NCBI GenBank assembly: GCA_965240325.2
Contig: OZ251225.1
Coordinates: forward strand, 1,798,001 to 1,862,000
Direction: 5' to 3'
DNA: 64,000 bases
Origin: Rebecca billardiae RCC1528
Lineage: Eukaryota > Protista > Haptophyta
Shown in pieces: positions 6,555 to 47,702 of this stretch (positions are counted from its first letter, which is position 1; every line of letters starts with the position of its first letter). The position numbers were made by a program, and so were the translations under genes. The notes under the pieces are model-generated. The model searched no databases, was not told where the DNA came from, and saw nothing but the letters and a program-made list of their open reading frames with translations.

Positions 6555-7468
6555 CTGCACGGCCTGGCGTTCCGGGCCCGGGCCCGACGCGGCATGCGTG
6601 AGTGCACGGCTCGCGGCGGCCGTGTGGTGCGAGACGCGGCCTTGGGACACGGCCAAGATGAGCGCGTCGAGAAGCGCCGTCGCCATTGTCTTTCGCTCCG
6701 GCACTAAAGACGCCGGACGCTCGATGGTGGGATCCGGACCACTCTTCTGAACTCCGTTGCCAACGGCGCTTCGCCACAGCACCGAGCACGGCGGGTGCGG
6801 TCCGTCGCCGCCGCTGACGCGCTGTTGGGGCTGCAGGACATGCGCCGACGGCGCTTGGAGATCTGCACGAGCTTGGAGATGCGTAAGCATGCGCTGCAGC
6901 TGGCTCGGGAGGATCCGTGGTCGGGCGGTGGAGGGGCCAGCCTCGCGGAGCAGCCCAGCAACGGCGGCTGACACTCCCGTGCGGCCGGCCGACTACCCCC
7001 GTCCCGCGGCCCAGGCCGCGGCAGGGCGGTCCCAGGCGCCAGCCGAGCCGCCGAGCGCTTGCGATGCGTCGCGGTCGTCGTCGCGTTGTCAGCCAACGCA
7101 CCCTTGGGCCGTGAGTGAGCAGCAAGGATGCTTACTTAAACGTTGTTGACTGACATTTTTGTCAAATTTGTCATTTGTGCAGTGCCGGTGCCGGACAGCC
7201 GCGCCTGTCGGAGTCGGACGGTCTATAGTAAATAGTCTGTAGTCTCTCTGACACGTGACAAGTAGACAATCACTATGCTATGCTGACATCATCACACTGT
7301 GCAACATGATGGCGACGCCGATACGGTGCGGCACGCCCTCCCGCATCCGCCAGGCCACGCGCCTTCGCTCAAGCGTGATGGCGGCATCAGCGGCAGGCAG
7401 TGGGTGGGCTTGAATGTGCGAGGCTGACTTGGGGAGCGTGATCTTGAGTGGCTTGGCGCCCGCTCTCG

Positions 7469-10400
7469 TCACTGCTCGGTGCCAAGATACCCAGCGATCA
7501 AGTGCGACATGCTTGCCGAGAAGGCGATCACAAATGGCTCGAGGAGAACGAACGTCTCGGCCGTGGAGATCTGCGGGCGCGGGATGGGCGGGTGGATGGC
7601 CGCGCGTGAGTGCGGGGCGAAGCAGCACGGGGGCGCACAGGCGCACGCGGCGTGCGTTCGAGGGCAGCGTACGGGCCGCCGCGCGCGCTCACCCCCCACG
7701 CGGCGAGAGCAAGCGACGTCACTTCGGGCGAGAAGCCGATGCCGAGCACAAGGCTCACCGCCGCGAGCGCGGCAAACAGGCCAACGACAAGCACCCATCC
7801 GAGTGCAAGCTGTGGGCGTGGGAGTGGGGCGGGCGTGGGAGCGGAGGGGCGGGAATGTGAGTGGCGGGCGGGTAGCAGAGCGCACGGCGGGGCGCAAGGG
7901 CCCACCCGCGCGTGCCACACGGCGCAGCGCCGCACCGATGCCTTGTCAGCCGTGGTCTCCTTCTTGGCGGGCGCGCCCTCGTCGTCGATGGCATACTTGC
8001 CGGCCGCGTCCTTGGGCAGGGGCCCTGCCGCCTCCTGCAGCTTGTCGAGGTTGAAGATGCCCGTGGTGGGCTGCGAGGCCAGAATAGACGGCGGCGCTGG
8101 CCTCACGGGCCTCTGCCCGCCCGCGTCGTCTCCCGGCGTCGGGTAGATCTCCGCGGCCTGCTCGGACGTGGACGCCTCGCCCTCCGGACCGGGACCGGGC
8201 GGGCTCGGCGGCGCGCTCAGCCGCGGGCTGCGCGGAGGGCTAGGCGGCGGGCTCGGTCCGGGCGGCGATGAGGGCGCTGAGGGCGGTGCCGACGAGCCAG
8301 CCGCGGCATCACCCTCCGCAGGTGTCGTCGACGGACCCGTCGGCGGCGTGCTCGACGGCGCAGGCCGCGAGCGTAGCAGACCCCCGCCCTCGTCGCCAGT
8401 GCCCATCGTGAGCGGCGCGCGCGCCGCGCCGCCCAGTCCAGCCGGCCGCGGCCCGCTGGATGTGGGCGTCACCCTGAGGACGGGAGCGGGGGACGGCGCA
8501 GGAGCAAGGGGCGCGTGGGTGGAGGAGACTAGGTCAGTGCACGGGCCAGGGCGGAGATGGAGCGTGCGCACGGGGCGGCGCATCCGCCGCTGCACTGCGT
8601 CGCACGCACCGTGTGCCCGGTGGGGCTCCGCGACTCGCGCCACCAAGCGGCGCGCGGCGCGGCGGGGGCGCGGCCGCCGGCGCGCCGCGCGGCGCAGCGG
8701 CGGCTGGGGCGCCTGCTGGGCGTGCGGGGAGCCGCGAGCACGAGGTCGGCGGAGGCATCGACGCACGCGTGCCCACAGGCTGCGCACGCGGCGGCGGCGG
8801 CACCCCCCGCGCGTCCGCCGTCGATGTCGGCGGTGTGGTGCTTGGCTGCGAGCCGCCCGCCTGCGGCCGCTGCGAGCCTGCCGAGCTGTTCTGGCTCAGC
8901 CGCTTGGTGAGCTCCCATGGCGGCGGCACGCGCTCGCGCTTCATGGCAGCAGCGGCCGGCGCGCCCGCCGCCGGCCCCGCCTGCGGCGCGTCGTACGACA
9001 GCGCGATCCGCGAGCGGCACGCGCTGCCTGAAGGCTGGCCGACCGGAGGCTGGCGCAGCCGCATGGAGGCGGTCGAGCCAGCGGCGCTGGTCGGGCCTCC
9101 GACCTCGCTGTTGGCGCGCGTGCCGGGAAGGCTGCCTGCGCTGATCGAGGGCACGTTGATGCGCTCGCGCATGCCTGCCGGCGGAGGCACGCGCGTGCTT
9201 GTCGGCCGAGGCACCGGCCGCAGCGTGGGCGGCTGCGCCGGGGCGAGCCCCGCGCGCACGGGCATCACGCGGCCCGAGCCGGCCGGCGCGCCCGCCGCCG
9301 TGGCCTCCGGGCCACGGCACTCGCCCTCCTCAGGGATCGCCGGCTCTGCAACCCTCGTCCGCATGATGCCGGCGCCTTCGGCCGAGCCGGGCTCAGCGGC
9401 CGAGTCCTCGGCGGCCGCCCGCATGCCTTCCGTTCCGACAGGCGTCGTCTGCGACGATGTCGGGCGCGAGCGCGAGGCGGTCGTTGAGGCCGTTCCGGGC
9501 CGCGAGCCGCGGCGGTCCCAGCGCCGACGCCGGCCGCCGAAGCACATGGAGGCGGTGACGATCATCGCCTGCACGAGGCGCACGGGCGAGGACGCCCACG
9601 AGAGCCGCGACGCGGCGATGAAGACGAGGCGCGTGATGTACAGCGCCGGGAGCGCGACGATCGCCACAAGCGTCGCGTGCAGGAAGAGCGCGCCGGCGCC
9701 GGTCGTCGCGTCCGCGCCGCTCGAGAACCAGGGGAGGCCGCCTGCAAAGAAGGCGGCCTGCAAGCAGAGGATGAGCATCATCTGCGTGAAGACCGTCTGC
9801 AGCAGCGCGGGGCGGCGCAGCCCCGGGTCGGCCTCGCCGATCGAGAGCGCGAGCAAGGAGAAGTTGTCCTCCAGCGCGAACTTGATCCGCTTCGGCAGCG
9901 GGATGCGCGCCTCCGAAGGCTTCTTGGCCTTCTGCCGGAACTGCGCCGCGGCGGCCGAGCGCGCGGCGAGGCGCTTCAGCCGGTCGGTGTTGCGCGTGCG
10001 CAGGCTCACGCGCGAGTCTTGGAGGGACGCGGCGCCGACGAGCAGGATGTTGAGGAACGTGATCACCGCGACCGCGGCGATCAGCCCGACCGAGGTGAAG
10101 AGCGTCTCGGCGATGCCGGACACCTGCGACGTGGACGAGCTGCTGCTGTCGCCAGCGCCACCGCCGCCGCCACTGGCGGTGTCGGGCGACGGGCCGGGCG
10201 GCGGCGGCGGCGACATCACACCGGCAAAGTCCGTCAGGTGCGAGGTCGTGCAGACCAGGGTGCCGTTGAGCTGGTCGAGGTTGTTCTGGTTCGGGTTGAA
10301 GGCGGTGGCCACGCCGCTGAACTGCCACGCACGCGAGTCCTCGTCCCAGAAGGCGCAGCGCGCAAACTCGTTGCACGCCAGGCCCATCCAGCCATTGTCA

Positions 10401-13400
10401 CACACGCAGCCGCCTTCGACGCACTGGCCGTTGCCCGAGCAGCCCTCGCGCTCGGGCTCGGTGCAGTTGCCCGCGCCGGCGACCACCGTCTGCGGGTGCA
10501 GCGGGATCTCGATGGTGATCTTGCCGTTCACATTCCGCACGGCATACTCGGCGCCGCTCGCGTCGGCCAGCCAGAACGAAATCGGCGTCGTCACGAGCGT
10601 GGGCTCAGCCGTGTCGAAGCCCGAGTACACGTTGCGCTTCCACTCGACAAAGTTGACGGCGACGGAGGTGTCGCCGCCGACGGCGAGCGCGTTGAGGAGG
10701 GAGACGCCATCCGGCAAAGTCACCTTCGCCGCGCCCTCCGGCGCGTCGAGCGACGCGCCCGACAGCCCCGACGCGAGCACACGCGCCGTCGAGACCGCGA
10801 GCGACGGGTAGGACAGCACGGTCACTGGCTCGTCAGCGATCGAGTTGCCGAGCAGCACCGGCATGAAGGAGTTGAGCACAAAGTCGACGAGCCCGGCGCT
10901 CGTCAGGCGCCAGCCCTCGTTCAAGTCGGAGGCGTTGAACGGCTGCACGCCCGGGTCGGTGTAGTTGACAATCGCCGCGTTCGCCGCCTGCTGCGCGGCG
11001 AGCGCGGCGTCCATGGCGGTGAAGAGATGGTCGACAGCAGTGAGCATCAGCACGCGAGCGTCATCCTCGAGCACGTCCGATGCCGAGTCGGCAGAGAGCT
11101 TGAGGACGGCGATCGCAATCAGCTGCGAGGGCACGAGCACGGCGGAAGGATCCAGCTCGAGCACGGCGGAGAGCGACTGCATCACCATTGCCACGCTCGA
11201 GTCTGTCTGCAGCACGTTCAGCTGCGAGCTGCGCACGAGCTCGATCAGGCGGGTCGCGCGCACCTCGGCGAATGTCCCGTTGGTGCCGTTCACGCTGTCC
11301 GCCGCGTCCACCTGCAGCTGGCGCGTGCGCCTGCGGTCTTGCGACGAGGCGGCGAGGGCAGAGATGAGCGATAGCGCCTCGTCGGAGCGGCCCTCTGCCA
11401 CGGTGTTGCCGATCAGCTCGAGCACGGTGTTTGTCTTGGCCTCGTCGATCACGACCGCGTTGGCGGTCACGACCACTTCGGCCGATGCCCGGCCCTGGTA
11501 GTAGTCGTAAACGTGTACCGTGATGGCGTGCGTGCCCTCCTCAAGGTACACGCTGGTGAACTTGCCCAGCTTCTGCTCGGTGAGCACGCTCGCCCCGTTG
11601 CTGAAGCGGTACGTGAGGGGCAGGTCGTCCGGGTCGTCGTCTGTCCACCCGTTGGCCTCGAGCTCAAAGCGCGTCGTGAGCGCATCGCCAGTCTCGGGCA
11701 CGGACTCGAGCGCGCCGCCAAAGGGCGCGCGGTTCACCACGATGCTGATATCCGCAACGGACGACGCCCCGTTGGTGGTGTCAGTGGCCTGCAGCATGAA
11801 GGCGTACGTGGCTCCGGCGATGAGCTGGTTGCTGCGCACGACGAGGTTGGCCGCGGTCGCGCCGGTCGTCGTGACGAGGCTGCTGAAGAGGTCGAGGGCG
11901 GGGCCATCCGCTGTCCACAGGTAGGTGAACGCACCGGCGTTGCCGTCCACTTCTGTTGCAGAGCCGAAGAGCTGCAGCCGGTCGTTCGAGTTGATCTTGT
12001 GTTTGTCGCCCAGCGAGGAGATGATGTCCACCACGGGCACTGGGTCGGATACTACGGTGAGTATCACGTCGGTCGACGCCGAGCGCGCGCCCTTGCTCGC
12101 AGTGACCGTGAGGACATACGAGGTGTCGGCGGCAAACGCGCCCCCAGGGAACGAGATGACGCGCCCGTCCGTGCTGTAGTACGACTCGAGGATGGCGATC
12201 TCAGGCACCGAAGTGAGGACAAATGTCAACGGCGCCGTCGCGTCGTCGGGGTCGTTCGGATCGTAGGACGCAGACGCGTCGATCACGAGGGGCGACTCGG
12301 CCGAGAGGGTGCGCGCAGTGATCGACGTGCGCACGACAAGCGTCTCGTCGATCACCTGCAAGGTCACCTCCTCAGAAGAGTAGGCAGTCGGCTCGCTGGT
12401 CATGGACGCGTTGAGGCGCATGGTGTACGTGCAGCCCGGCTTGAGCATGAGGCCCGGGATGAGCAGCTGGTTGGTGGTGGCAGCGTCGAGCACCGTCATG
12501 AGCTCGGTGGGCACCTGGTCAAGTGCGTCGACGCCTGTGTCGGTGAAGAACGAGTCGGCGAGGCTCCAGCTGAACAGGATGCCGTTGACGCCACTGAAGC
12601 ACGACGCCGTTGTAGCCGTGCCGGTGATCACGCGGTCAGCGGACGGCTTGATGCTCAGCACGGCAGGCGCCTCCATCCGGAGGGAGGGCGAGGGTGTGGG
12701 CTGCCGCACAACCTTCCAGCGCGCGAGCTGTGACTCGCGCCCGAGGAACGACTTGACCTTCACCTGAAACGTCCATTTGTCCCCGCGGATATCCGAGAGC
12801 TCGAGGACCTTGCTCGCCGCGCCGTCGAGCGTGCGAAGCTGCACGTTGAGCTCGGCGGCAAAGTCGGAGACGGACGGGTCGACGCGCCACTGGTACGTGA
12901 GCGGCTTGATGCCGCCGTTTGACGCCTGCGTGCCGTCGATCTGAAGCACGTCGTTGGGGCAGGCTGACACCTGCGTCATGCCAGAGAGCGAGAGCGTGGG
13001 CTGGAGGCAGTCCACGTCCGTGCCGCACGGGAAGTCGGCATCGATCGTGTAGGACGAGTCAGCATACTTGGGCGTGTCTCCGGCGGGCGTGGCCAGCGGC
13101 GCGATGACGCCTGCGCGGGTGCGCACGGCCATGCCCGGGGCAGCCGACGTCTTGATGGTGAGGTAGGCCACCAGCCGGATGTCGCTCGTCCAGTAGCACT
13201 GCGGCGCCGTCGTCGCTGTACCTCGGATGGTCGCGACTGTTGCGTCGTCCAGCACCGTCGCGCAGCTCCCGACGCTCGTCATCCCGCCGCGGTTGGTTGG
13301 CTGCAAGTCGAAGAGCACGACGATCGTGTTGCCGTTGGGCGCGAATGTGGCGCTCTCAATCACCGGCGCGTGCAGCCCGACGTATTCGATCGAGACGCCC

Positions 13401-16400
13401 TCCGGCTGCGTCCACTGCTGCCCGTTGAGCGAGACAGTGATGCTGCTCGCGCCCTCGCTCCCGTACGGCGTCGTGACGCTGACGGATGCGTCGTCAAAGG
13501 ACGTCGGCGCGCTCGCCACGACCGTACCGAAGCGCACGCGCAGGTAGCTGGCGAAGGCAGCGTCGACGCTGCTCAGCCCGACAAAGCCAGTGCCACTCAG
13601 CGTGATGTCCTCGCCGCCGTCGGCGGACGCCGTCGGCTGCGAGACAGCCGTGAGGGACGGGTTGGCGTAGTAGACAAACTGCGCGCCCGACGAGGTGATG
13701 GAGCCGTCCGCGCCCGCGTTGAGCGTCACCTCGACGGTCACGTTGCTCGCGCCGCTCGCCGCCGGCAGTGCATCGCACAGGACGCGGGTCGGGTTGCTGA
13801 GCAGCGTGGCGGCGACGGGTGCAGATGGGATGCCGTCATCGCCGATCAGCACGCAGCCGAGCTGATCGTCGCCGTCGGTGCCGTAGTCGGCAAAGCCGGT
13901 GCCAGACAGCGTGATGCGCGTGCCGCCGTCGACAGGGCCGCCCGGCGGCTGGACAGACGTCACACTGACGGCGTCGATGTCGTAGAGCTCAAACTGGACG
14001 GGGTCGAACGAGAACGGGTCCACGTGGAAGCCGCCGTTGAGCGAGAGCGAGACTGTGTACACGCCGCTTGTCGTGTCCGTCGGCGCGCTGCACACGACCG
14101 CGTCCGAGGCGGCGACGCGCGCGCCGACGCTCACCGAGCGCCCGCTGCGCGTGTAGATGCACACGGCAACATCCTCGCCGGCGCGCAGGTCGACGAAGCC
14201 GAGGCCGCTCAGCGTGAGCGCGCTGGTCGACCCCAGCGCGCCACCTGCCGGCGAGCCAGACTCGACGAGCGCGTTGTACATGATGAAGGTGGGCGCGTCC
14301 GAGGAGAAGGTGAAGCCATCCAGGGAGACGTCGACGGCGAGCGTGAGCTGGGTGTTGACGCCGACTGGTGAGATGTACGGCAGCGTCGTGCGCAGGTCGG
14401 AGAGACCGCGGTCCGGCAGCGAGCCAGCGACATCGCTCGTCGCGCCTGACGGCAGCGTTACGCGCGCGGTCAGGCGCAGGAGGTCCTTGTAGTCGTTCAG
14501 CACCGCATCGCCCGTCTCCCAGCCGGAGATGGTCACCTGGTTGAGGTCGAGGCCCTGCGGCGTGCCGGCGGGCGTGATGCGCAGCGCGCGGATGTCGACA
14601 ATGTCGTACACCGTGAACAGCTTGCTCACCGACACCGGGTCGCACACGCCGTCGGCCGCCTCCGCCTCGTCACATCCGTCGGCAACAATGTCGAGCGTCA
14701 GCCTGTCGGTCTTCCGGGTAGCGGACGGCGCGCGGCACACGATCGTGGTCGACGTGATCGCGCTCACCGGCGTCGTGAGCACCTGCCCCGCCGACGTGCC
14801 GGCGAAGCCGCTGAAGCGGCAGAGGAGTGACGACGTTGACGACGATGCGCTGATGCGCACCGGGTTGGCAAACCACTCGGCGATACGCTCGACGCCCTGC
14901 GCCACGTCCGCCGCGTCGGAAGTAAAGCCGCCGCTCCCCGTGATCGTGATGGGCGTGCCCACGGCAAAGGCCGAGCCAGTCGGCGCAAGCTGCTCGATGG
15001 ACAGCAGCGCGAGCGGGTTGGCCGAGAACGCGACCGAGATGGCCGACGTCTCGAACGATGTCCACGGCAGACCGCTGAACTGGTAGCACAGCGTCGCGCC
15101 GGAGAGCAGCGTGAAGAAGGTGAAGCCGGCGGTTCCGTCTGCGCCGACCGTCTGGACGGCTCCGACCGTGTCGTAGCCAGAGTCAGCCGCCACGTCGCAC
15201 GTCGTCTCGTCCGGGAGGATCCAGATCGCGCGGTCGCCCGCGCCGACGCCGACGCCGGTGAACTGCACCGTGCGGACGCGCGTCGCGATCGCGTCGGAGA
15301 CGACTGCGATGGACGTCTCCGGGCCGGTGATCTCCTGAACGACGAGTGTCAGGTTGGCGTACAGCTTGAAGGGCTCGGCCGCGAACGAGTAGCAGAGGCG
15401 CATGCCCGTGCTGCCCGTGGCGGGGAGGAAGAGGAAGTCCGCGCTGCCCGTCGCGCCGACGGCCTGCCGGCCGCCCGTCTGCTCCTTGTGCGGCACGCAC
15501 CCGGCCTGGTCGCACGTGCAGCTCGTCGCGTCCGGAGCGACCCAGAACGCCTCGTCGCCGCTGGCAACGCCCACGCCCTCAAAGTAGACCGTCTGCGCAA
15601 CGCTGACCACGCCCGCGACGGAGGACTGCGCCGTGGCGAGCTGGCGGCCGCGCCGCACCGCGCTGGGCACGTCGTCGATGGCTGCGAGATCAAACGCGTC
15701 GAGCGTGATGCCCGGGTACTGCTTGTACGCGCGCCCGCGGAAGCTGTAGCACAGCGGCAGCGCGCTCCCCGTCCCCGCGGGCGTGAAGCCCACCGTGCCG
15801 CTCAGGCCGTCGGCCGAAGTCGAGCCCACGGCGAGATCGCCGGTGAGGGACAACCCCGCGCCCGTGCACTCGGTCGAGAAGTAGAGCGCGTCGGCATCGG
15901 TGATGGCGATGCCCGAGAGCGCGATCGACTCGGCCACGTCGACGACGGAGACGGTGCGCGTCGGCCCGGTGACGTCCGCGGCCGTCGCCTGAAACTGCGG
16001 GTAGAGACGCCACTGCTTGTAGCCCGAGCCAAACGCCGACTTGAAGCGGTAGCACAGCTGCAGCAGGCTGCTCCCGGAGAAGAAGTCAAAGTCGGTCAGG
16101 CCAGCCGCGCCGACCGTCTGGTACTGCCCCGTGAACGTTGCGGTGCCTGGCAGCGTGCCGCCGTGCCCCTGGGGGCTCTCATCGCACGTGGTCGCAGAGG
16201 CGTTGATCCACTTCACGCGGTCGCCGGCCTTCACGCCGACGCCGGTGAAGGTGACGGGCTCGGTCACATCGACGACGGCGAACGACGCCGCGGGGCCGAG
16301 CACCTCGTACACGACGACCGTCGCGTCCGCAAAGTGCGTGAACGGCTCCCCGACGAACTGGTAGCACAGCTGCAGCGAGTCAACGCCTGCGGCGACCGTC

Positions 16401-22400: not shown

Positions 22401-25400
22401 GGCGGCGACGGTGGTGGGCTCGGCGGTGGCGACGGTGGCGGGCTCGGCGGGGGGCTTGGTGGCGGCGATGGCGGTGGCGACGGCGGTGGGCTTGGCGGCG
22501 GTGATGGCGGCGGGCTCGGCGGTGGTGACGGCGGTGGGCTCGGCGGCGGGCTCGGCGGCGGTGATGGCGGTGGCGACGGCGGCGGGCTCGGCGGCGGTGA
22601 CGGCGGCGGGCTCGGTGGCGGCGACGGCGGTGGGCTCGGAGGTGGTGATGGTGGTGGGCTCGGCGGCGGGCTCGGTGGCGGGCTCGGCGGTGGCGACGGC
22701 GGTGGACTTGGCGGCGGGCTCGGTGGCGGGCTCGGTGGTGGTGATGGTGGTGGGCTCGGCGGCGGGCTGGGCGGTGGCGATGGCGGCGGGCTCGGTGGAG
22801 GGCTTGGCGGAGGACTGGGTGGTGGCGATGGCGGTGGACTTGGCGGCGGGCTCGGTGGCGGGCTCGGCGGCGGTGATGGCGGCGGGCTTGGCGGCGGGCT
22901 TGGCGGTGGGCTCGGCGGCGGGCTCGGCGGTGGTGATGGTGGCGGGCTGGGCGGCGGGCTGGGCGGCGGGCTTGGCGGCGGCGATGGCGGTGGCGATGGT
23001 GGAGGCGATGGCGGTGGGCTTGGCGGCGGTGACGGTGGCGGGCTCGGCGGCGGGCTCGGCGGCGGGCTCGGCGGCGGGCTCGGCGGTGGTGATGGTGGCG
23101 GGCTGGGCGGCGGGCTTGGTGGCGGGCTGGGTGGCGGCGATGGCGGCGGGCTCGGTGGTGGGCTTGGTGGCGGGCTTGGAGGTGGCGATGGCGGTGGGCT
23201 TGGAGGTGGTGACGGCGGCGGACTCGGTGGCGGGCTTGGCGGCGGCGACGGCGGCGGGCTCGGCGGCGGGCTTGGCGGGGGCGATGGTGGCGGGCTCGGC
23301 GGCGGGCTCGGCGGCGGGCTTGGCGGCGGCGATGGCGGTGGCGATGGTGGTGGGCTCGGCGGCGGGCTCGGCGGTGGGCTTGGGGGTGGCGATGGCGGTG
23401 GCGACGGCGGCGGGCTTGGTGGCGGCGAGGGCGGTGGGCTCGGCGGTGGGCTCGGTGGCGGCGACGGCGGTGGGCTCGGCGGTGGTGACGGTGGGGGGCT
23501 CGGCGGTGGTGACGGTGGGGGGCTTGGTGGGGGGCTTGGTGGCGGCGATGGCGGTGGCGACGGCGGTGGGCTTGGCGGCGGGCTTGGCGGTGGCGACGGC
23601 GGCGGGCTCGGTGGCGGGCTTGGCGGTGGCGATGGCGGCGGGCTCGGCGGCGGGCTCGGCGGCGGGCTCGGCGGTGGCGATGGTGGTGGCGACGGCGGCG
23701 GACTCGGTGGCGGCGACGGCGGCGGGCTCGGCGGCGGGCTTGGTGGCGGGCGTGGCGGCGGGCTCGGCGGCGGCGATGGTGGAGGGCTCGGCGGCGGGCT
23801 CGGCGGCGGGCTCGGTGGCGGGCTCGGTGGCGGGCTAGGCGGTGGGCTTGGCGGCGGGCTCGGCGGTGGGCTCGGTGGAGGGCTTGGGGGTGGCGATGGC
23901 GGAGGACTGGGCGGTGGGCTAGGTGGGGGTGGCGACGGCGGTGGGCTTGGCGGCGGGCTTGGCGGGGGCGACGGTGGCGGGCTTGGTGGCGGGGGCGATG
24001 GTGGTGGTGATGGCGGCGGCGATGGAGGAGGGCTCGGTGGCGGTGAGGGGGGCGGGCTCGGCGGTGGTGACGGTGGAGGACTTGGAGGAGGGCTTGGCGG
24101 TGGTGATGGGGGCGGACTTGGTGGTGGCGATGGCGGCGGGCTGGGAGGCGGAGGAGAAGGAGGCGGACTCGGCGGCGGGCTTGGCGGCGGAGAGGGTGGC
24201 GGTGATGGTGGTGGGCTCGGAGGTGGGCTCGGTGGCGGACTGGGCGGCGGTGATGGCGGCGGTGACGGTGGCGGTGACGGTGGCGGCGATGGTGGTGGGC
24301 TCGGTGGCGGTGATGGCGGCGGGCTCGGCGGCGGGCTCGGCGGCGGCGGGCTCGGAGGTGGCGATGGAGGCGGTGACGGTGGTGGGCTCGGCGGTGGGCT
24401 CGGAGGAGGCGACGGCGGCGGGCTTGGTGGCGGACTGGGTGGCGGTGACGGTGGTGGAGACGGTGGCGGAGACGGTGGCGGCGACGGTGGTGGGCTCGGT
24501 GGCGGTGATGGCGGCGGGCTCGGCGGCGGGCTCGGCGGCGGCGGGCTTGGAGGTGGCGATGGAGGCGGTGACGGTGGTGGGCTCGGCGGTGGGCTCGGAG
24601 GAGGCGACGGCGGCGGGCTTGGTGGCGGACTGGGTGGCGGTGACGGTGGCGGAGACGGTGGCGGAGACGGTGGCGGCGACGGTGGTGGGCTCGGTGGCGG
24701 TGATGGCGGCGGGCTCGGCGGCGGGCTCGGCGGCGGCGGGCTCGGAGGTGGCGATGGAGGCGGTGACGGTGGTGGGCTCGGCGGTGGGCTCGGAGGAGGC
24801 GACGGCGGCGGGCTTGGTGGCGGACTGGGTGGCGGTGACGGTGGCGGAGACGGTGGCGGTGACGGTGGCGGCGACGGTGGTGGGCTCGGTGGCGGTGATG
24901 GCGGCGGGCTCGGCGGCGGGCTCGGTGGCGGCGGGCTTGGAGGTGGCGATGGAGGCGGTGACGGTGGTGGGCTCGGCGGTGGGCTCGGAGGAGGCGACGG
25001 CGGCGGGCTTGGTGGCGGACTGGGTGGCGGTGACGGTGGCGGAGACGGTGGTGGAGACGGTGGTGGTGATGGTGGTGGGCTCGGTGGCGGTGATGGCGGC
25101 GGGCTCGGCGGCGGACTCGGAGGTGGCGGGCTCGGAGGTGGTGACGGAGGCGGTGACGGTGGTGGGCTCGGCGGTGGGCTCGGAGGAGGCGACGGCGGCG
25201 GGCTTGGTGGCGGACTGGGTGGCGGTGACGGTGGCGGAGACGGTGGCGGAGACGGTGGCGGCGACGGTGGTGGGCTCGGTGGCGGTGATGGCGGCGGGCT
25301 CGGCGGCGGGCTCGGCGGCGGCGGGCTCGGAGGTGGCGATGGAGGCGGTGACGGTGGTGGGCTCGGCGGTGGGCTCGGAGGAGGCGACGGCGGCGGGCTT

Positions 25401-28400
25401 GGTGGCGGACTGGGTGGCGGTGACGGTGGCGGAGACGGTGGCGGAGACGGTGGCGGCGACGGTGGTGGGCTCGGTGGCGGTGATGGCGGCGGGCTCGGCG
25501 GCGGGCTCGGCGGCGGCGGGCTCGGAGGTGGCGATGGAGGCGGTGACGGTGGTGGGCTCGGCGGTGGGCTCGGAGGAGGCGACGGCGGCGGGCTTGGTGG
25601 CGGACTGGGTGGCGGTGACGGTGGCGGAGACGGTGGCGGAGACGGTGGCGGCGACGGTGGTGGGCTCGGTGGCGGTGATGGCGGCGGGCTCGGCGGCGGG
25701 CTCGGTGGCGGCGGGCTTGGAGGTGGCGATGGAGGCGGTGACGGTGGTGGGCTCGGCGGTGGGCTCGGAGGAGGCGACGGCGGCGGGCTTGGTGGCGGAC
25801 TGGGTGGCGGTGACGGTGGCGGAGACGGTGGTGGAGACGGTGGTGGCGATGGTGGTGGGCTCGGTGGCGGTGATGGCGGCGGGCTCGGCGGCGGACTCGG
25901 AGGTGGCGGGCTCGGAGGTGGTGACGGAGGCGGTGACGGCGGTGGGCTCGGCGGTGGGCTCGGAGGAGGCGACGGCGGCGGGCTTGGTGGCGGGCTGGGT
26001 GGCGGTGACGGTGGCGGAGACGGTGGCGGCGACGGCGGTGGAGACGGTGGTGGGCTCGGCGGCGGCGACGGCGGAGGACTCGGCGGCGGACTCGGAGGCG
26101 GCGGGCTGGGCGGCGGGCTTGGCGGCGGACTCGGTGGTGGAGATGGCGGCGGTGACGGTGGCGGCGAGGGCGGTGGGCTCGGCGGCGGCGAGGGCGGTGG
26201 CGAGGGCGGGGGACTTGGTGGAGGACTCGGCGGCGGGCTAGGCGGTGGCGACGGTGGCGGGCTGGGAGGCGGCGACGGTGGTGGACTTGGGGGTGGCGGC
26301 GATGGCGGTGGGCTTGGCGGTGGGCTTGGTGGTGGAGATGGTGGCGGTGACGGCGGCGGCGACGGTGGCGGTGACGGTGGTGGCGACGGTGGCGGGGAAG
26401 GAGGCGGGCTGGGCGGCGGGCTCGGCGGTGGACTCGGCGGTGGGCTCGGTGGTGGGCTCGGCGGAGGTGACGGAGGCGGGCTTGGAGGTGGTGGGGATGG
26501 TGGCGGACTCGGCGGCGGGCTCGGCGGTGGGCTTGGTGGCGGCGATGGCGGCGGGCTCGGCGGCGGGCTCGGCGGTGGGCTCGGCGGTGGGCTCGGCGGC
26601 GGGCTCGGCGGCGGGCTCGGCGGCGGGCTCGGTGGCGGCGATGGCGGTGGGCTCGGGGGCGGGCTCGGTGGTGGGCTCGGCGGAGGAGGTGAAGGTGGTG
26701 GGCTCGGTGGGGGACTTGGCGGTGGGGATGGTGGCGGCGATGGCGGCGGGCTTGGTGGCGGGCTTGGCGGTGGGCTTGGTGGCGGCGATGGCGGCGGACT
26801 CGGCGGTGGGCTCGGCGGTGGGCTTGGGGGCGGCGAGGGCGGCGGGCTTGGCGGCGGGCTGGGAGGTGGACTTGGCGGTGGCGGCGACGGCGGCGGGCTT
26901 GGCGGCGGTGACGGCGGCGGTGACGGCGGCGGCGATGGCGGCGGACTGGGTGGTGGACTTGGCGGTGGGCTTGGCGGTGGCGATGGCGGTGGGCTCGGCG
27001 GTGGGCTCGGCGGCGGGCTCGGTGGCGGCGATGGCGGTGGGCTGGGTGGCGGGCTTGGAGGTGGGCTTGGCGGTGGCGGCGACGGCGGCGGGCTTGGTGG
27101 TGGGCTTGGCGGCGGTGACGGCGGTGGCGATGGCGGCGGCGACGGCGGCGGGCTGGGTGGTGGGCTGGGTGGTGGGCTGGGTGGTGGGCTTGGCGGTGGG
27201 CTCGGCGGCGGGCTCGGCGGCGGGTTCGGCGGCGGCGATGGCGGCGGGCTCGGTGGCGGGCTTGGCGGAGGCGGTGAAGGTGGCGGGCTCGGCGGTGGGC
27301 TCGGCGGCGGGCTGGGCGGCGGGCTGGGCGGCGGGCTCGGCGGCGGGCTCGGCGGCGGGCTCGGCGGCGGGCTCGGCGGCGGGCTCGGCGGCGGGCTCGG
27401 TGGCGGGCTCGGTGGCGGGCTTGGCGGTGGGCTCGGCGGTGGGCTCGGCGGCGGGCTCGGCGGAGGTGGCGACGGCGGTGGACTGGGCGGTGGGCTCGGT
27501 GGCGGCGAAGGTGGCGGCGATGGCGGCGGGCTCGGCGGCGGGCTCGGCGGCGGGCTCGGCGGCGGGCTCGGCGGTGGCGATGGCGGGGGGCTCGGCGGCG
27601 GGCTTGGCGGGGGCGGCGATGGCGGCGGGCTTGGTGGCGGGCTTGGCGGCGGCGACGGAGGCGGGCTCGGCGGCGGGCTTGGCGGCGGGCTCGGCGGTGG
27701 CGACGGCGGAGGGCTCGGCGGCGGGCTGGGCGGCGGACTCGGAGGTGGACTTGGCGGAGGTGGTGACGGCGGTGGACTGGGCGGCGGGCTGGGGGGCGGG
27801 CTGGGCGGCGGGCTGGGCGGCGGGCTGGGCGGCGGGCTCGGCGGCGGGCTTGGTGGCGGGCTCGGCGGCGGGCTCGGCGGTGGGGATGGCGGCGGGCTCG
27901 GCGGCGGGCTCGGCGGCGGGCTTGGCGGTGGGCTCGGCGGCGGACTTGGCGGGGGCGGTGATGGCGGAGGGCTTGGTGGCGGGCTTGGCGGCGGCGATGG
28001 CGGCGGGCTCGGCGGCGGGCTCGGCGGCGGACTCGGCGGAGGTGACGGCGGAGGGCTTGGTGGAGGGCTTGGCGGTGGGCTTGGCGGTGGGCTCGGCGGA
28101 GGTGGCGACGGCGGTGGACTGGGCGGTGGGCTCGGTGGCGGCGAAGGCGGTGGCGATGGCGGCGGGCTCGGCGGCGGGCTCGGTGGTGGGCTTGGTGGCG
28201 GGCTGGGCGGTGGCGATGGCGGGGGGCTCGGCGGCGGGCTGGGCGGGGGTGGCGATGGCGGCGGGCTTGGCGGCGGGCTTGGCGGTGGTGATGGCGGTGG
28301 GCTCGGCGGCGGGCTTGGTGGCGGGCTCGGCGGAGGCGACGGCGGAGGGCTCGGCGGCGGGCTCGGCGGTGGGCTTGGCGGTGGACTCGGCGGAGGTGGT

Positions 28401-31243
28401 GACGGCGGTGGACTGGGCGGCGGGCTCGGCGGCGGCGAAGGCGGCGGGCTCGGTGGCGGGCTCGGCGGCGGGCTCGGTGGTGGACTTGGCGGCGGGCTCG
28501 GCGGGGGCGATGGCGGGGGGCTCGGCGGCGGGCTTGGCGGCGGCGGCGAAGGTGGCGGGCTTGGCGGCGGGCTTGGCGGCGGCGATGGAGGCGGGCTCGG
28601 CGGCGGGCTTGGTGGCGGGCTCGGCGGGGGGCTTGGTGGCGGGCTCGGCGGTGGCGATGGCGGAGGGCTTGGCGGCGGACTCGGCGGTGGCGGTGACGGC
28701 GGTGGACTGGGCGGCGGGCTCGGCGGCGGCGAAGGTGGCGGCGACGGCGGCGGGCTCGGCGGCGGGCTCGGCGGCGGGCTCGGAGGTGGTGAGGGTGGTG
28801 GGCTTGGTGGCGGGCTCGGCGGTGGGCTCGGCGGTGGGCTTGGCGGTGGGCTCGGCGGCGGGCTGGGAGGAGGACTTGGTGGAGGAGGGGACGGCGGCGG
28901 GCTCGGTGGCGGGCTGGGCGGTGGCGAAGGCGGAGGAGAAGGCGGTGGGCTGGGCGGAGGAGATGGCGGCGGGCTCGGTGGCGGACTTGGCGGCGGTGGG
29001 CTCGGCGGCGGGCTCGGCGGCGGGCTTGGCGGGGGTGATGGCGGTGGAGAAGGGGGCGGAGAAGGCGGCGGCGAAGGCGGCGGGCTTGGGGGCGGAGAAG
29101 GCGGCGGCGGGCTCGGCGGCGGGCTCGGCGGCGGGCTGGGCGGAGGCGACGGAGGAGGGCTAGGCGGCGGGCTCGGCGGCGGGCTCGGCGGTGGTGAGGG
29201 CGGTGGGGAAGGCGGCGGAGAAGGCGGCGGAGAAGGCGGTGGGCTGGGCGGTGGTGAGGGCGGGGGAGGGCTCGGCGGCGGGCTGGGCGGCGGGCTAGGC
29301 GGTGGCGACGGAGGAGGGCTCGGCGGCGGGCTCGGCGGCGGGCTCGGCGGCGGGCTCGGCGGCGGGCTTGGTGGCGGCGGGCTCGGTGGCGGCGAAGGTG
29401 GCGGGCTTGGTGGCGGGCTTGGCGGCGGGCTTGGCGGTGGTGACGGCGGCGGACTCGGTGGTGGCGAAGGCGGTGGGCTGGGCGGCGGGCTGGGCGGCGG
29501 GCTGGGCGGCGGGCTGGGCGGCGGGCTGGGCGGTGGCGGGCTCGGCGGAGGAGATGGTGGCGGGCTCGGCGGTGGCGATGGTGGCGGGCTCGGCGGCGGG
29601 CTTGGCGGCGGGCTCGGTGGCGGAGACGGCGGTGGACTCGGCGGCGGTGGCGATGGCGGCGGACTCGGTGGCGGGCTGGGTGGCGGCGAGGGAGGCGGGC
29701 TCGGCGGTGGCGACGGCGGTGGGCTCGGCGGCGGCGACGGCGGCGGGCTGGGCGGCGGGCTGGGCGGCGGGCTGGGCGGCGGGCTGGGAGGAGGACTTGG
29801 CGGCGGCGGGCTGGGCGGCGGGCTGGGTGGCGGGCTTGGGGGCGGCGAAGGAGGCGGGCTCGGTGGTGGTGATGGCGGCGGGCTCGGCGGAGGCGACGGC
29901 GGCGGGCTGGGCGGCGGGCTCGGCGGCGGGCTCGGCGGCGGGCTCGGTGGCGGGCTCGGTGGCGGCGGGCTTGGTGGTGGGCTCGGCGGCGGGCTCGGTG
30001 GTGGTGAGGGAGGTGGGCTGGGCGGCGGGCTCGGGGGCGGGCTTGGTGGGGGCGAAGGCGGCGGGCTCGGCGGTGGAGACGGTGGAGGGCTCGGTGGTGG
30101 CGAAGGCGGCGGGCTCGGAGGCGGGGGGCTCGGCGGCGGGCTGGGTGGGGGCGACGGAGGCGGGCTCGGCGGTGGGCTCGGAGGCGGGCTCGGCGGTGGG
30201 CTTGGCGGTGGCGACGGCGGCGGGCTCGGCGGTGGCGAAGGTGGCGGGCTCGGTGGCGGGCTTGGCGGCGGCGACGGGGGCGGCGGGCTTGGCGGCGGGC
30301 TCGGCGGCGGGCTCGGTGGTGGTGAGGGAGGTGGGCTGGGCGGCGGGCTGGGCGGCGGGCTCGGCGGCGGGCTCGGCGGTGGGCTCGGCGGCGGCGAGGG
30401 CGGCGGGCTCGGCGGCGGGCTGGGCGGCGGGCTCGGAGGGGGTGGGCTGGGTGGTGGGCTGGGCGGCGGGCTCGGTGGCGGCGATGGCGGCGGGCTGGGT
30501 GGCGGGCTGGGCGGCGGGCTGGGCGGCGGGCTCGGTGGCGGGCTCGGTGGCGGCGGGCTGGGCGGCGGGCTCGGCGGCGGGCTCGGTGGCGGTGAGGGGG
30601 GTGGACTTGGCGGAGGAGACGGGGGTGGGCTTGGCGGGGGCGATGGCGGCGGGCTTGGCGGAGGCGATGGCGGCGGGCTCGGCGGCGGGCTCGGCGGCGG
30701 GCTCGGCGGCGGCGGGCTCGGCGGCGGGCTCGGCGGCGGGCTCGGCGGCGGGCTCGGCGGCGGGCTCGGCGGTGGCGACGGGGGCGGGCTCGGCGGCGGG
30801 CTCGGCGGCGGGCTCGGCGGTGGCGGGCTTGGCGGCGGGCTCGGCGGCGGGCTAGGCGGCGGGCTCGGCGGTGGCGACGGGGGCGGGCTCGGCGGTGGGC
30901 TCGGCGGCGGGCTCGGCGGTGGAGACGGGGGCGGGCTCGGCGGCGGGCTCGGCGGCGGGCTTGGAGGTGGCGGGCTCGGCGGCGGGCTCGGCGGCGGGCT
31001 CGGCGGTGGCGACGGGGGCGGGCTCGGTGGCGGGCTCGGCGGCGGGCTCGGTGGCGGGCTTGGTGGCGGGCTTGGCGGTGGTGTCGGCGGCGGCGGCGAC
31101 GGCGGCGGCGACGGCGGCGGCGACGGCGGCGGGGACGGCGGCGGCGACGGCGGTGGCGATGGTGCCTGGGCCCGAACCCCAGCCGCAGCTGCGAGCACGA
31201 GAAGAGTGCGAAGGAGTACCCGCCCGCCTACAGAGCGGGCCAT
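7469..31243 (-). CDS. Giant extensin-rod / IPT / REJ / GAIN-GPS / five-TM polycystin-1-like receptor, ~7796 aa; exons 31243-8610, 8473-7936, 7809-7693, 7570-7469
   Basis: Signal peptide MARSVGGRVLLRTLLVLAAAAGVRA. REJ motifs (LVIDASASYDPND; VNRAPFGG..TTRFELEANGWTD..LPLTYRF), EGF (CSGNGQCVEGGCVCDNGWMGLAC) and GPS (CAFWD..W..GV..CTTSHLTDFA). Three phase-compatible GT-AG introns join the ORF to TM4/TM5 (AWGISTAETFVLLEPF). Confidence 0.88.
15030..17870 (-). repeat. Nine tandem ~95-120 aa protein repeats (G.GV..GD...W/F....C...GG......F.F.....LCY.F) within the giant gene
   Basis: Repeat-ending motifs RVCHK, LCFRF, LCYGF, LCYKF, LCYQF, LCYRF, LCYSF, LCYSF and LCYQF at regular spacing. Confidence 0.85.
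17873..31165 (-). repeat. Coding (Ser-Pro3)n / Ser-Pro4 array, ~13.3 kb, ~4430 codons
   Basis: 12-bp periodic array with heavy synonymous variation and an open frame throughout. Confidence 0.97.
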
Positions 31244-32185: not shown

Positions 32186-32231
32186 CTCGCCTGCCTGAGC
32201 TGTGTGCGTCTCTTATTCTTAGTAAACTGTA
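32186..32231 (-). repeat. Dispersed motif family B copy 1
   Basis: Reverse complement TACAGTTTACTAAGAATAAGAGACGCACACAGCTCAGGCAGGCGAG; ends 8 bp before the MFS ATG. Confidence 0.9.
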
Positions 32232-32239
32232 CGATCAGG

Positions 32240-38680: not shown

Positions 38681-38777
38681 CCTGTAAGCAGTTCTTGAAT
38701 GCGTACCCCCATATGATTATGATAACGCGCCCATCAGAGGCGTGCGAGCCAAGAACCAAGGTGGTCGGCCTATCCGT

Positions 38778-43685: not shown

Positions 43686-43786
43686 GTTGTGGTGGCAGCT
43701 CAGGCGAACGAACTGTTACACATGTCCGACTAAGCAATCACGCCAACCAAGGACAAATAAGAGTCCAAATGACACGGCCGGGGCTC

Positions 43787-47278: not shown

Positions 47279-47587
47279 TCATTCGTCTTTCTGTTTGGAT
47301 TCCGCGCTCTTTGTACGCAGTTTCTTCGGCGGCTCTGGAAGCAAATCGGCGTAGTGGAGCAATCGCGCGACGGTGTCTGACGGCTGCGCGCCGACTGAGA
47401 GCCAGTACTTGGCCCGCTCGAAGTTCAGAGTCAACTTCTTTCTGCCGGTGTGGTCGATGTGGGGGTCGTAGGTGCCGATCCGATCGATGAACTTGCCGTC
47501 ACGGGGCGCGTTCGCGTTGGCCACCACCACTCTGTAAAATGGGTTGTGCCGGTTCCCCCATCGCTGCAGGCGCAGTCGCACCACCAT
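47279..47587 (-). CDS. MRPS16: Organellar (probably mitochondrial) ribosomal protein bS16, 102 aa
   Basis: [47 protein letters not shown]. Confidence 0.93.
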
Positions 47588-47702
47588 CGTGGACAGCTGC
47601 GCGTCGCGACGTACGATGACGACGGATCCGGACTTCCGGAGCGCCGGACCGGTTGCGGCATCCGGGCTCCGGCGGCGGGGCGCGAGTGAGCGTCTTTGCG
47701 CA

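What the first reader, a model, noticed from the sequence alone, without database searches (positions are those of the whole stretch)
7469..31243. A ~7800-aa polycystin-1/adhesion-type receptor tipped with a micron-scale extensin rod
Seen: signal peptide, ~4430 aa of Ser-Pro3, nine Cys-beta repeats, about five IPT/TIG domains, REJ, EGF, an intact GPS (H-L/T at 10240-10232) and five TM helices. Known: REJ + GAIN/GPS + these TM signatures define the polycystin-1 family; SPn arrays are hydroxyproline-glycosylated polyproline-II rods in plant and algal walls; PPII rises about 0.31 nm per residue. Inference: the rod would be about 1.3-1.4 micrometres if fully extended. It is distal, with no globular head beyond it, so it looks like a hair, antenna or lever rather than a stalk. 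It could couple shear or contact to a self-cleaved GPS receptor, or be a visible surface or flagellar fine hair encoded by one gene. I do not know of a described protein with this combination.
Basis: partly seen in the sequence, partly recalled or inferred. Interest (0 to 1): 0.92.

Follow-up and report, generated by a model that had tools for sequence, protein, structure and literature searches.

The report
Headless micron-long proline rod receptor
A pavlovophyte alga has a real gene for a protein of about 7,800 residues: a 4,430-residue Ser-Pro-Pro-Pro rod, about 1.4 micrometres if extended and with nothing at its tip, joined to a polycystin-1-like self-cleaving membrane base. It is probably a one-gene surface hair, and its nearest described counterpart is the Chlamydomonas flagellar-hair protein MST3.

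Summary
One minus-strand gene (31243 to 7469) encodes, in order:
- a signal peptide;
- a 4,430-aa (SPPP)n array;
- nine two-Cys beta repeats;
- 4 TIG domains plus 1 Anth_Ig-like domain;
- REJ (Pfam 7e-46);
- an EGF;
- a GAIN domain with H-L|T exactly at 10240-10232 (AF2 pLDDT 81; best fold matches suREJ1, PKD1L2/3 and BAI3);
- five TM helices, the last two in small exons behind three introns.

The array is not a recent or collapsed repeat. It uses 155 different 12-mers, third codon positions are random, and only 5 of 4,236 core residues are not Ser or Pro.

It is not a full polycystin-1. It has no PLAT domain and no channel half (TM6-11). Its TM4-5 hairpin does match PC1 TM4-5.

Diacronema lutheri keeps the same layout: signal peptide, about 1,870 aa of SPPP, then the REJ-GAIN-5TM base. 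The public gene model there omits the array.

The scan had already noted relatives with a globular head (FG-GAP, RCC1 or LRR) elsewhere in this genome. This copy is the headless one.

Chlamydomonas MST3 (Cell 2024) is a giant hydroxyproline rod with a free N-terminal PPII filament and a polycystin-type anchor.

No RNA evidence could be obtained. Function as a hair or sensor is inferred, not shown.

The parts
31163..31243 (-). Start codon and signal peptide (MARSVGG...AAAGVRA|QA)
   Evidence: Read directly from the translation. It shows a positive n-region, a hydrophobic core and a VRA-QA cleavage-type site, and the array starts immediately after it.
17876..31165 (-). 4,430-aa (SPPP)n array: 1,014 SPPP and 50 SPPPP units. 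The N-terminal half is punctuated by SPPPP every 37-65 residues, followed by 399 uninterrupted SPPP units (ORF residues 2543-4138).
   Evidence: There are 155 distinct 12-mers. Third-codon-position identity at lag 12 is 0.46, about that of random draws. The longest exact DNA repeat is 365 nt. A 195-nt higher-order unit is about 86% identical, but only within residues ~1400-2400.
15026..17875 (-). Nine tandem two-Cys beta repeats (97-119 aa each) with no Pfam family
   Evidence: repeat parsing on the ..GD..W...C......LCY.F.. pattern. One search gave no Pfam hit. Atlas features point to unnamed eukaryotic clusters and to TIG-like folds, which is a lead only.
13367..15025 (-). IPT/TIG (Ig-like) domain stack: 4 TIG stretches plus 1 Anth_Ig-like stretch
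   Evidence: TIG 4.1e-22 with 4 stretches; Anth_Ig 6.4e-5 at ORF residues 5712-5779.
11429..12481 (-). REJ domain (with PKD-like sub-repeats)
   Evidence: PF02010 REJ 7e-46, 157 bits, profile positions 38-421 of 452. Vertebrate polycystin-1 is hit through this region.
10220..11479 (-). GAIN domain: seven-helix subdomain A, beta-sandwich subdomain B with an inserted EGF (10373-10441), and a GPS with H-L|T at 10240-10232
   Evidence: AF2 model me359dc663871: pLDDT 80.8, pTM 0.76. Foldseek PDB: BAI3 GAIN 3e-10, then BAI2, latrophilin, CELSR1 and GPR126. AFDB Swiss-Prot: suREJ1 1.3e-14, PKD1L2 and PKD1L3 first. HL|T sits in the turn between the last two strands (E407-412 and E417-423).
9611..10114 (-). 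TM1 (10028-10114), a helical cytoplasmic segment carrying the conserved FALEDN..GE.EPGLRRP.LL motif, TM2 (9737-9805) and TM3 (9611-9688)
   Evidence: These elements are conserved in P0014, P0008, P0009, P0086, P0156 and P0157.
7936..9610 (-). Long low-complexity cytoplasmic loop between TM3 and TM4, with the conserved MKRERVPPPWEL motif (8909-8944). It is interrupted by intron 1 (donor 8609; acceptor 8474 or 8456).
   Evidence: tblastn of P0014 and splice enumeration. The intron 1 acceptor is not resolved without RNA.
7469..7809 (-). Exon 3 (7809-7693, TM4), intron 3 (7692-7571, GTGAGC..CAG), and exon 4 (7570-7469, TM5 with the ..TAETFVLLEPFVI.. motif and the stop at 7471-7469). Intron 2 lies just upstream (7935-7810).
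   Evidence: A profile of the TM4-5 hairpin matches vertebrate PC1 TM4-TM5 at 12-15 bits, against at most 6.8 bits in 2,000 block-shuffled controls.

Best explanation
This is a real, intact gene of a pavlovophyte haptophyte. It belongs to a lineage-specific family of giant surface proteins built on a REJ-GAIN-5TM base. That base is the polycystin-1 ectodomain core plus the equivalent of the PC1 N-terminal five-helix membrane domain, without PLAT and without the channel half.

This copy has no head. After signal-peptide cleavage, the mature N-terminus is a 4,430-residue SP3 array.

Inferred mechanism, by analogy with extensins and Chlamydomonas MST3: the prolines are hydroxylated and O-glycosylated, and the array forms a stiff polyproline-II rod. 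The rod projects up to about 1.4 micrometres from the cell or flagellar membrane as a fibrous hair. It stands on a stack of about 15 beta-sandwich domains.

The GAIN domain has its H-L|T site intact. If it self-cleaves, it forms a non-covalent, force-sensitive joint between the hair and the 5-TM base. Pulling or shear could then shed the hair or expose the tethered stalk and signal through the base and its ~430-residue cytoplasmic loop.

Shown: the gene, its domains and folds, conservation of the layout, and purifying selection on the array. Inferred: glycosylation, rod shape, GPS cleavage, location and signalling.
For: - Architecture: uninterrupted 7,610-codon ORF with an ordered domain series.
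- GAIN: fold and HL|T geometry confirmed.
- Membrane base: 5-TM base with canonical splice sites, conserved in homologues. The TM4-5 hairpin matches PC1 TM4-5 above all 2,000 shuffles.
- Selection on the array: about 0.1% non-Ser/Pro residues in the core while third codon positions are random, with 155 different 12-mers. This argues against both assembly collapse and recent expansion.
- Conservation of the layout: D. lutheri locus L003 has signal peptide, about 1,870 aa of SPPP, then the same base in one 5,921-codon ORF. L001 has at least 570 aa of Pro-rich tract upstream of the same base.
- Expression in the family: one member is transcribed in Pavlovales sp. CCMP2436 (MMETSP transcript).
- Precedent: in MST3, a free 429-residue Pro-rich N-terminus forms a measured 146-nm glycosylated PPII filament. 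That paper's rule is that uninterrupted high-density proline tracts form exposed rods (PMC11015965).
- Glycosylation capacity: unchecked scan notes report a P4H + GT77 + (SPPP)n gene cluster in this genome.
Against: - No transcript or read evidence for this gene. No RNA run was listed, and the single run laid gave only a few short fragments.
- Array length rests on one assembly. The short-read contig L002 breaks at the array edge.
- Hydroxylation, glycosylation, GPS cleavage and localisation are all untested.
- The Pfam GPS score is below threshold, and this copy has lost one of the two GPS disulfides.
- Some family members (P0008, P0009, P0086) lack HL|T, so cleavage is not essential to the family.
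- The 5-TM fold could not be modelled (pLDDT 43).
- No channel or G-protein-coupling module is present, so the signalling output is unknown.
- That pavlovophytes carry fine flagellar hairs is my own recollection of the older ultrastructure literature. It could not be verified in the paper library.
Confidence: 0.58

Rival explanations
1. Passive glycocalyx or matrix element. The rod acts as a spacer, brush or tether that sets the thickness of the cell coat, holds knob scales or mucilage, or keeps viruses, bacteria and grazers at a distance. It has no sensory role. The GAIN domain serves only as a shedding point or a folding module.
For: - No signalling output domain is present in this copy: no channel, PLAT, 7TM or EF-hand.
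- Some relatives lack HL|T.
- The array has no ligand-binding head.
- Free glycan-coated tetrapeptide-repeat fibrils occur in natural waters (TLP-4, PMC11725842). That fits rods that are shed.
Against: - The membrane base is elaborate and conserved. It carries strongly conserved cytoplasmic motifs (FALEDN..GE.EPGLRRP, MKRERVPPPWEL), and sister proteins have EF-hand pairs. That is more than a simple anchor needs.
- HL|T is retained here.
Confidence: 0.25
2. Adhesion or mating agglutinin. This would be a fibrous hydroxyproline-rich glycoprotein that mediates cell-cell or cell-substrate contact through its glycans, like the Chlamydomonas sexual agglutinins. The REJ module would play a gamete-recognition role, as in sea urchin sperm.
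For: - The best structural match of the GAIN region is the sea urchin sperm receptor for egg jelly.
- According to unchecked scan notes, headed paralogues in the same genome carry recognition-type heads such as FG-GAP, LRR, lectin and RCC1.
Against: - This copy has no head or lectin domain.
- Agglutinins (from my own knowledge) have globular heads and are not multipass membrane proteins.
- Nothing here ties the gene to a sexual stage.
Confidence: 0.1
3. Artefact or dead gene. Either the array length is inflated or mis-joined by assembly of a repeat, or the locus is a non-expressed relic whose long ORF survives because stop codons are rare in DNA of 67-82% GC.
For: - There is no independent spanning read or RNA evidence.
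- The short-read contig ends at the array.
- The antisense strand also carries ORFs of up to 972 codons in the array.
Against: - The DNA of the array is heterogeneous: 155 different 12-mers and a longest exact repeat of 365 nt. Long reads can place such sequence uniquely.
- The frame is kept over 22.8 kb, with near-perfect Ser/Pro purity against random third codon positions.
- All domains are intact, with conserved motifs and canonical splice sites.
- Independent assemblies of two other pavlovophytes show the same layout.
Confidence: 0.07

Closest known systems
Chlamydomonas reinhardtii MST3 (Cre06.g309951), axial protein of the flagellar mastigoneme (PMC11015965)
   Same: - Giant protein (8,572 aa) with a signal peptide.
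- An N-terminal, almost uninterrupted Pro-rich tract forms a free glycosylated PPII filament at the distal tip.
- The proline array acts as a length ruler on the micrometre scale.
- A C-terminal polycystin-family multipass membrane anchor is followed by a long cytoplasmic part.
   Different: - MST3's anchor is a PKD2-like channel domain lacking S1, completed by SIP. Here the anchor is REJ + GAIN/GPS + a 5-TM module resembling PC1 TM1-5, with no channel domain.
- Most of the MST3 rod (42 P13..P11(XXP)3 repeats) is sheathed by MST1, and only 429 aa are free. Here all 4,430 aa are plain SP3, with no partner-binding repeat pattern.
- The lineages differ (green alga versus haptophyte), and no sequence homology was shown.
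Polycystin-1 family (PKD1, PKD1L1-3, PKDREJ, sea urchin suREJ)
   Same: - REJ domain (7e-46).
- GAIN domain with HL|T, whose nearest fold matches are suREJ1, PKD1L2 and PKD1L3.
- TM4-TM5 hairpin motif (..G.GF..W.I[SA]..F...EP..I..) shared with vertebrate PC1.
   Different: - No PLAT domain in the first cytoplasmic loop.
- No TM6-11 channel-like half and no TOP/polycystin domain.
- No LRR, C-type lectin or PKD-repeat N-terminus. It has a proline rod, novel Cys repeats and TIG domains instead.
Adhesion GPCRs (latrophilin, BAI, CELSR)
   Same: GAIN domain fold with an autoproteolysis motif immediately before TM1, and a long adhesive or structural ectodomain.
   Different: No secretin-like 7TM (five helices, unrelated motifs), and no hormone-receptor domain.
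Plant and algal extensins / hydroxyproline-rich glycoproteins, including Chlamydomonas sexual agglutinins
   Same: Ser-Pro3-4 repeats, the canonical motif for Hyp-O-arabinosylation and Ser-O-galactosylation, which gives rod-like PPII structure.
   Different: - There is no Tyr in the array, so no cross-linking motifs.
- It is an integral multipass membrane protein rather than a secreted wall protein.
- The array is roughly ten times longer than typical extensins.
TLP-4 glycofibrils from pond water (CryoSeek II, PMC11725842)
   Same: A single linear chain of tetrapeptide repeats (S/T-P-x-x type) whose fibril shape is held by a thick glycan coat. The source proteins are unknown, and candidates occur in algae.
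   Different: TLP-4 carries 3,4-dihydroxyproline with two glycans per repeat, and its sequence is not known. No link to this gene was tested.

Membership tests
Polycystin-1 family | REJ domain | tested here: met
   PF02010 at 7e-46, 157 bits.
Polycystin-1 family | GAIN domain with a GPS H-L|T site just before TM1 | tested here: met
   AF2 pLDDT 80.8. Foldseek: GAIN of BAI3 at 3e-10; suREJ1 at 1.3e-14, PKD1L2 and PKD1L3 on top. HLT lies at 10240-10232 in the turn before the last strand. The Pfam GPS hit alone is below its cutoff (19.4 vs 22.5 bits). Cleavage itself was not tested.
Polycystin-1 family | PLAT domain between TM1 and TM2 | tested here: not met
   No PF01477 hit at E<=10. The TM1-TM2 segment is only about 75 aa and is predicted helical.
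Polycystin-1 family | Eleven TM helices, with a C-terminal six-TM PKD-channel-like half and a TOP domain | tested here: not met
   Five TM helices. No PF08016 or PF20519 hit. The gene ends 33 codons into exon 4, and the TatD gene follows.
Polycystin-1 family | N-terminal membrane domain (TM1-5) homologous to that of PC1 | tested here: inconclusive
   The family TM4-5 profile hits snake PC1 exactly at TM4-TM5 with 12.2 and 14.7 bits, against a maximum of 6.8 bits in 2,000 block-shuffled controls. hhalign on the whole module found only the GPS. The AF2 model of the base was too poor to compare.
Adhesion GPCR | Secretin-like 7TM after the GAIN domain | tested here: not met
   Five TM helices and no 7tm_2 hit.
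Extensin-type HRGP | Ser-Pro3-5 repeat array behind a signal peptide | tested here: met
   1,014 SPPP + 50 SPPPP units directly after the signal peptide.
Extensin-type HRGP | Prolines hydroxylated and O-arabinosylated, Ser O-galactosylated | not testable with these tools
   Needs biochemistry. The only lead is an unchecked scan note of a P4H + GT77 cluster in the genome.
Extensin-type HRGP | Tyr-containing cross-link motifs (YXY, VYK) | tested here: not met
   There is no Tyr among the 4,430 array residues.
MST3-like mastigoneme axial protein | Signal peptide followed by a dense, uninterrupted Pro tract (free PPII tip) | tested here: met
   Prolines are never separated by more than one residue over about 4,230 aa. 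The rule and the measurement are in PMC11015965.
MST3-like mastigoneme axial protein | P13..P11(XXP)3 repeats that bind MST1 | tested here: not met
   The array is plain SP3/SP4, with no long Pro runs (the longest token has 6 Pro) and no XXP triplets.
MST3-like mastigoneme axial protein | PKD2-like channel domain lacking S1 | tested here: not met
   No PKD_channel hit. The base is a REJ-GAIN-5TM module instead.

The most novel reading that the evidence does not exclude
One gene encodes a complete micron-scale sensory hair. A bare, glycosylated polyproline-II rod of about 1.4 micrometres would act as the lever of a GAIN-cleaved, polycystin-1-like mechanoreceptor that works without a channel half. 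If so, it would identify the molecular nature of the fine, non-tubular hairs of haptophyte cells or flagella. It would also show that the PC1 N-terminal five-helix module is an ancient, autonomous signalling unit. The rod length would be set genetically, and purifying selection would hold it at about 99.9% Ser/Pro purity.
Probability: 0.2. Interest if true: 0.85.

Novelty: new variant of a known kind. Interest (0 to 1): 0.62.

Why it matters
- Convergence: it would be a second, independent case, after Chlamydomonas MST3, of a polycystin-type membrane protein carrying a genetically encoded hydroxyproline rod of micrometre length. This one is in a distant lineage, has a different base (REJ-GAIN-5TM) and has no sheath protein. 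That suggests a polycystin base with an extracellular filament is an old or convergent design for surface hairs or sensors.
- PC1 evolution: the base is a natural 'PC1 minus PLAT minus channel' module. That bears on the open question of what the PC1 N-terminal membrane domain and GAIN cleavage do on their own.
- Physical limit: at 4,430 residues, the array would be by far the longest plain SP3 tract known to me. It would test how long a single glycosylated PPII helix can stay straight.
- Annotation: public gene models in D. lutheri omit the array, so this protein class is systematically under-annotated.

Tried and rejected
- RNA evidence: the look-up of sequencing runs listed no RNA run. The only run listed (X1) gave five short fragments and no splice joints. 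Transcription and the introns therefore remain unverified.
- 5-TM fold: the AF2 model of homologue P0014 with an 8-sequence alignment had pLDDT 43. It was not used for fold search.
- Whole-module hhalign against snake PC1 found only the GPS (probability 32%). Only the narrower TM4-5 profile with shuffle controls gave a signal.
- A PDB sequence search of the REJ-GAIN-TM part returned only EGF matches (reelin). No solved relative was found by sequence.
- A search for full-length relatives of 4,185-13,317 aa found only one FG-GAP/TIG protein, matching over 6% of the query. The reason is that public models and short-read contigs break at the arrays, not that relatives are absent.
- Intron 1 acceptor: many GT/GC-AG combinations keep the frame. 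I could narrow it only to 8474 or 8456.
- Pavlovophyte flagellar hairs: two paper searches found no usable open description. That link stays as my own recollection.
- Rejected: adhesion GPCR (no 7TM), full polycystin-1 (no PLAT or channel half), cross-linking extensin (no Tyr), and recent simple-repeat expansion (third codon positions random).
Full report
OBSERVATION

The minus strand carries one open reading frame of 7,610 codons (8534-31366). Translation shows a Met at 31243 followed by MARSVGGRVLLRTLLVLAAAAGVRA|QA. This is a textbook signal peptide, and it runs directly into Ser-Pro-Pro-Pro repeats. Upstream, only about 960 bp separate the start from a divergently oriented MFS transporter gene (32204-33943). 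There is no room for a head-encoding exon, so the protein is headless.

The array spans ORF residues 68-4497 (window 17876-31165). It has 4,430 residues: 3,330 Pro, 1,080 Ser and 20 others, arranged as 1,014 SPPP and 50 SPPPP units. The N-terminal half is punctuated by an SPPPP every 37-65 residues. Residues 2543-4138 are 399 perfect SPPP units in a row.

IS THE ARRAY REAL?

The DNA is far from a simple repeat. SPPP is encoded by 155 different 12-mers, and the longest exact repeat is 365 nt. Identity between neighbouring units is 0.85 at codon positions 1 and 2 but 0.46 at position 3. That third-position value is what random draws from the codon usage would give. Only one zone (about residues 1400-2400) shows a younger 195-nt higher-order unit, at about 86% identity.

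In the core (residues 68-4303), only 5 of 4,236 residues are not Ser or Pro. Synonymous sites are therefore saturated while the peptide is held almost perfectly. This points to strong purifying selection and argues against assembly collapse or a recent expansion. CCC codons are avoided: 5.6% of Pro codons in the array against 30% in the rest of the gene.

The array length has no independent check. A short-read contig of the same organism (L002) breaks at the array edge. No RNA run was listed. The one run I could lay gave only five small fragments.

THE REST OF THE ECTODOMAIN

- Nine repeats of 97-119 aa, each with two conserved Cys, occupy residues 4498-5447. They have no Pfam family. Atlas features suggest a TIG/Ig-like sandwich, which is a lead only.
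- Four TIG stretches (4e-22) and one Anth_Ig-like stretch follow.
- The REJ domain scores 7e-46.
- I modelled residues 6630-7125 with a 24-sequence alignment (A1). The model has pLDDT 80.8 and pTM 0.76. It shows seven helices, then a beta sandwich with an inserted EGF, then TM1.
- Foldseek against the PDB puts GAIN domains on top: BAI3 at 3e-10, then BAI2, latrophilin, CELSR1, GPR126, GPR110 and CD97.
- Against Swiss-Prot AlphaFold models, the first four hits are sea urchin suREJ1 (1.3e-14), mouse and human PKD1L2, and PKD1L3. Latrophilins come after these.
- H-L-T sits at 10240-10232, in the turn between the last two strands.
- The family consensus GPS is CxFWD..W..GC..LxCxCTHLTDFAG. This copy has lost the second disulfide pair.
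- Some relatives (P0008, P0009, P0086) have lost HL|T altogether.

THE MEMBRANE BASE

Three TM helices lie in the long ORF. The low-complexity stretch after them is coding, because the homologue P0014 shares MKRERVPPPWEL and other motifs. tblastn with P0014 finds the remaining exons in other frames.

Splice enumeration gives:
- intron 1 from 8609 to 8474 or 8456;
- intron 2 at 7935-7810 (GTGCGG..CAG);
- intron 3 at 7692-7571 (GTGAGC..CAG);
- the stop at 7471-7469.

There is no PLAT, PKD_channel or polycystin domain, either here or in relatives. AF2 on the base failed (pLDDT 43).

The TM4-TM5 hairpin (..G.GF.. short loop ..W.I[SA]...F...EP[LIV].I..) looks like vertebrate PC1 TM4-TM5. A profile of 16 protist sequences hits snake PC1 exactly there, at 12.2 and 14.7 bits. 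The maximum in 2,000 block-shuffled PC1 C-termini was 6.8 bits. The base is best read as the PC1 N-terminal membrane domain without PLAT and without the channel half.

RELATIVES

An exhaustive search found 1,559 proteins with E<=1e-3. The named close ones are from Pavlovales: D. lutheri KAG8459354.1, and Pavlovales sp. CCMP2436 KAJ1633484.1 and KAJ1620141.1. One of these is an MMETSP transcript. The neighbouring TatD gene is also closest to Pavlovales sp. CCMP2436, at 66% identity. The organism is therefore a pavlovophyte haptophyte.

In D. lutheri the public model (3,751 aa) is truncated. Locus L003 holds one ORF of 5,921 codons. It encodes a signal peptide, about 1,870 aa of SPPP, a small globular domain, a second Pro linker, the Cys repeats, REJ, GPS, the 5-TM base and an EF-hand pair.

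A third locus (L001) has at least 570 aa of Pro-rich tract running off the contig, upstream of the same base. The rod-on-REJ-GAIN-5TM layout is thus conserved, and rod length varies.

Earlier notes of this scan describe paralogues in the same genome with FG-GAP, RCC1, LRR or lectin heads on SPPP stalks. I did not test those notes. This gene is the headless form.

WHAT IS KNOWN

Chlamydomonas MST3 (PMC11015965) is one in kind:
- it has 8,572 aa and a signal peptide;
- its 429-residue Pro-dense N-terminus forms a free glycosylated PPII filament, measured at 146 nm;
- its 42 Pro repeats, sheathed by MST1, set the 800-nm length of the mastigoneme;
- it has a PKD2-like membrane domain, completed by SIP, that docks onto PKD2.

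The authors propose that uninterrupted high-density Pro tracts form exposed rods. Applied here, 4,430 residues give 1.37 micrometres at 0.31 nm per residue, or about 1.5 micrometres at MST3's measured 0.34 nm per residue.

The differences are substantial: the base (REJ-GAIN-5TM against a PKD2-like channel domain), the plain SP3 pattern with no sheath-binding repeats, the tenfold longer free rod, and the lineage.

CryoSeek II (PMC11725842) shows that glycan-coated tetrapeptide-repeat fibrils of unknown origin exist free in water.

A paper search combining REJ, GAIN, polycystin, haptophyte and hydroxyproline-rich found nothing on this layout.

MECHANISM

Most likely (0.58) this is a membrane-anchored fibrous hair. 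The signal peptide is removed, prolines are hydroxylated and glycosylated, and the SP3 array forms a stiff rod standing on about 15 beta-sandwich domains. The GAIN domain, if cleaved at HL|T, makes a non-covalent joint to the 5-TM base that force can break or activate.

Everything after 'signal peptide' in that account is inference.

Rivals:
- a passive glycocalyx spacer or scale tether (0.25);
- an adhesion or mating fibre (0.10);
- an artefact or dead gene (0.07).

VERDICT

It is a new variant of a known kind: polycystin-anchored hydroxyproline filaments. It is interesting mainly as a second, structurally different case, and as a natural PC1 'N-terminal module only' protein.

Noticed in passing
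L003:4051-21813 (Diacronema lutheri JAGTXO010000041.1): The public gene model KAG8459354.1 (3,751 aa) starts at locus position 10001. The ORF is open from 4051 and adds a signal peptide and about 1,870 aa of SPPP repeats, so the deposited annotation omits the whole rod.
   Followed up: partly
L001:2-2100 and P0003:1-100; L003 ORF residues ~1950-2090: In two homologues, a small globular domain of ~100-140 aa sits between the main Pro array and a second Pro linker. In P0003 it contains ..SSGSIVVIIRIF.., which resembles the G|SVVV autoproteolysis motif of SEA domains. The window gene lacks this domain. This was not tested.
   Followed up: no
window 17876-31165: Codon usage in the array avoids CCC (5.6% of Pro codons, against 30% in the rest of the gene) and enriches CCA. 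Ser uses both AGY (65%) and TCN (35%) codon families. This may be selection against homopolymer runs or against recombination between units.
   Followed up: partly
P0156, P0157, P0046 (relatives): A sister subfamily of the REJ-GAIN-5TM base carries an EF-hand pair in the long TM3-TM4 cytoplasmic loop. The window gene has no EF-hand, but it keeps a conserved MKRERVPPPWEL motif in the same loop.
   Followed up: partly
window 38742-39944 and 43217-44953 (+): Two ORFs about 4.5 kb apart each end in a HisKA-like stretch just under the Pfam threshold (about 25 bits against a cutoff of 26.9). They may be tandem histidine-kinase-type genes.
   Followed up: no
window 5577-6566 (-), 32204-33943 (+), 47544-49904 (+): The neighbouring genes are a TatD-type DNase (2e-47) immediately downstream, an MFS transporter divergently upstream, and a DEAD-box helicase. 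No glycosyltransferase or prolyl hydroxylase was seen among the large ORFs scanned in this window. The D. lutheri locus has a Glyco_transf_29 gene about 4 kb downstream of its homologue.
   Followed up: partly
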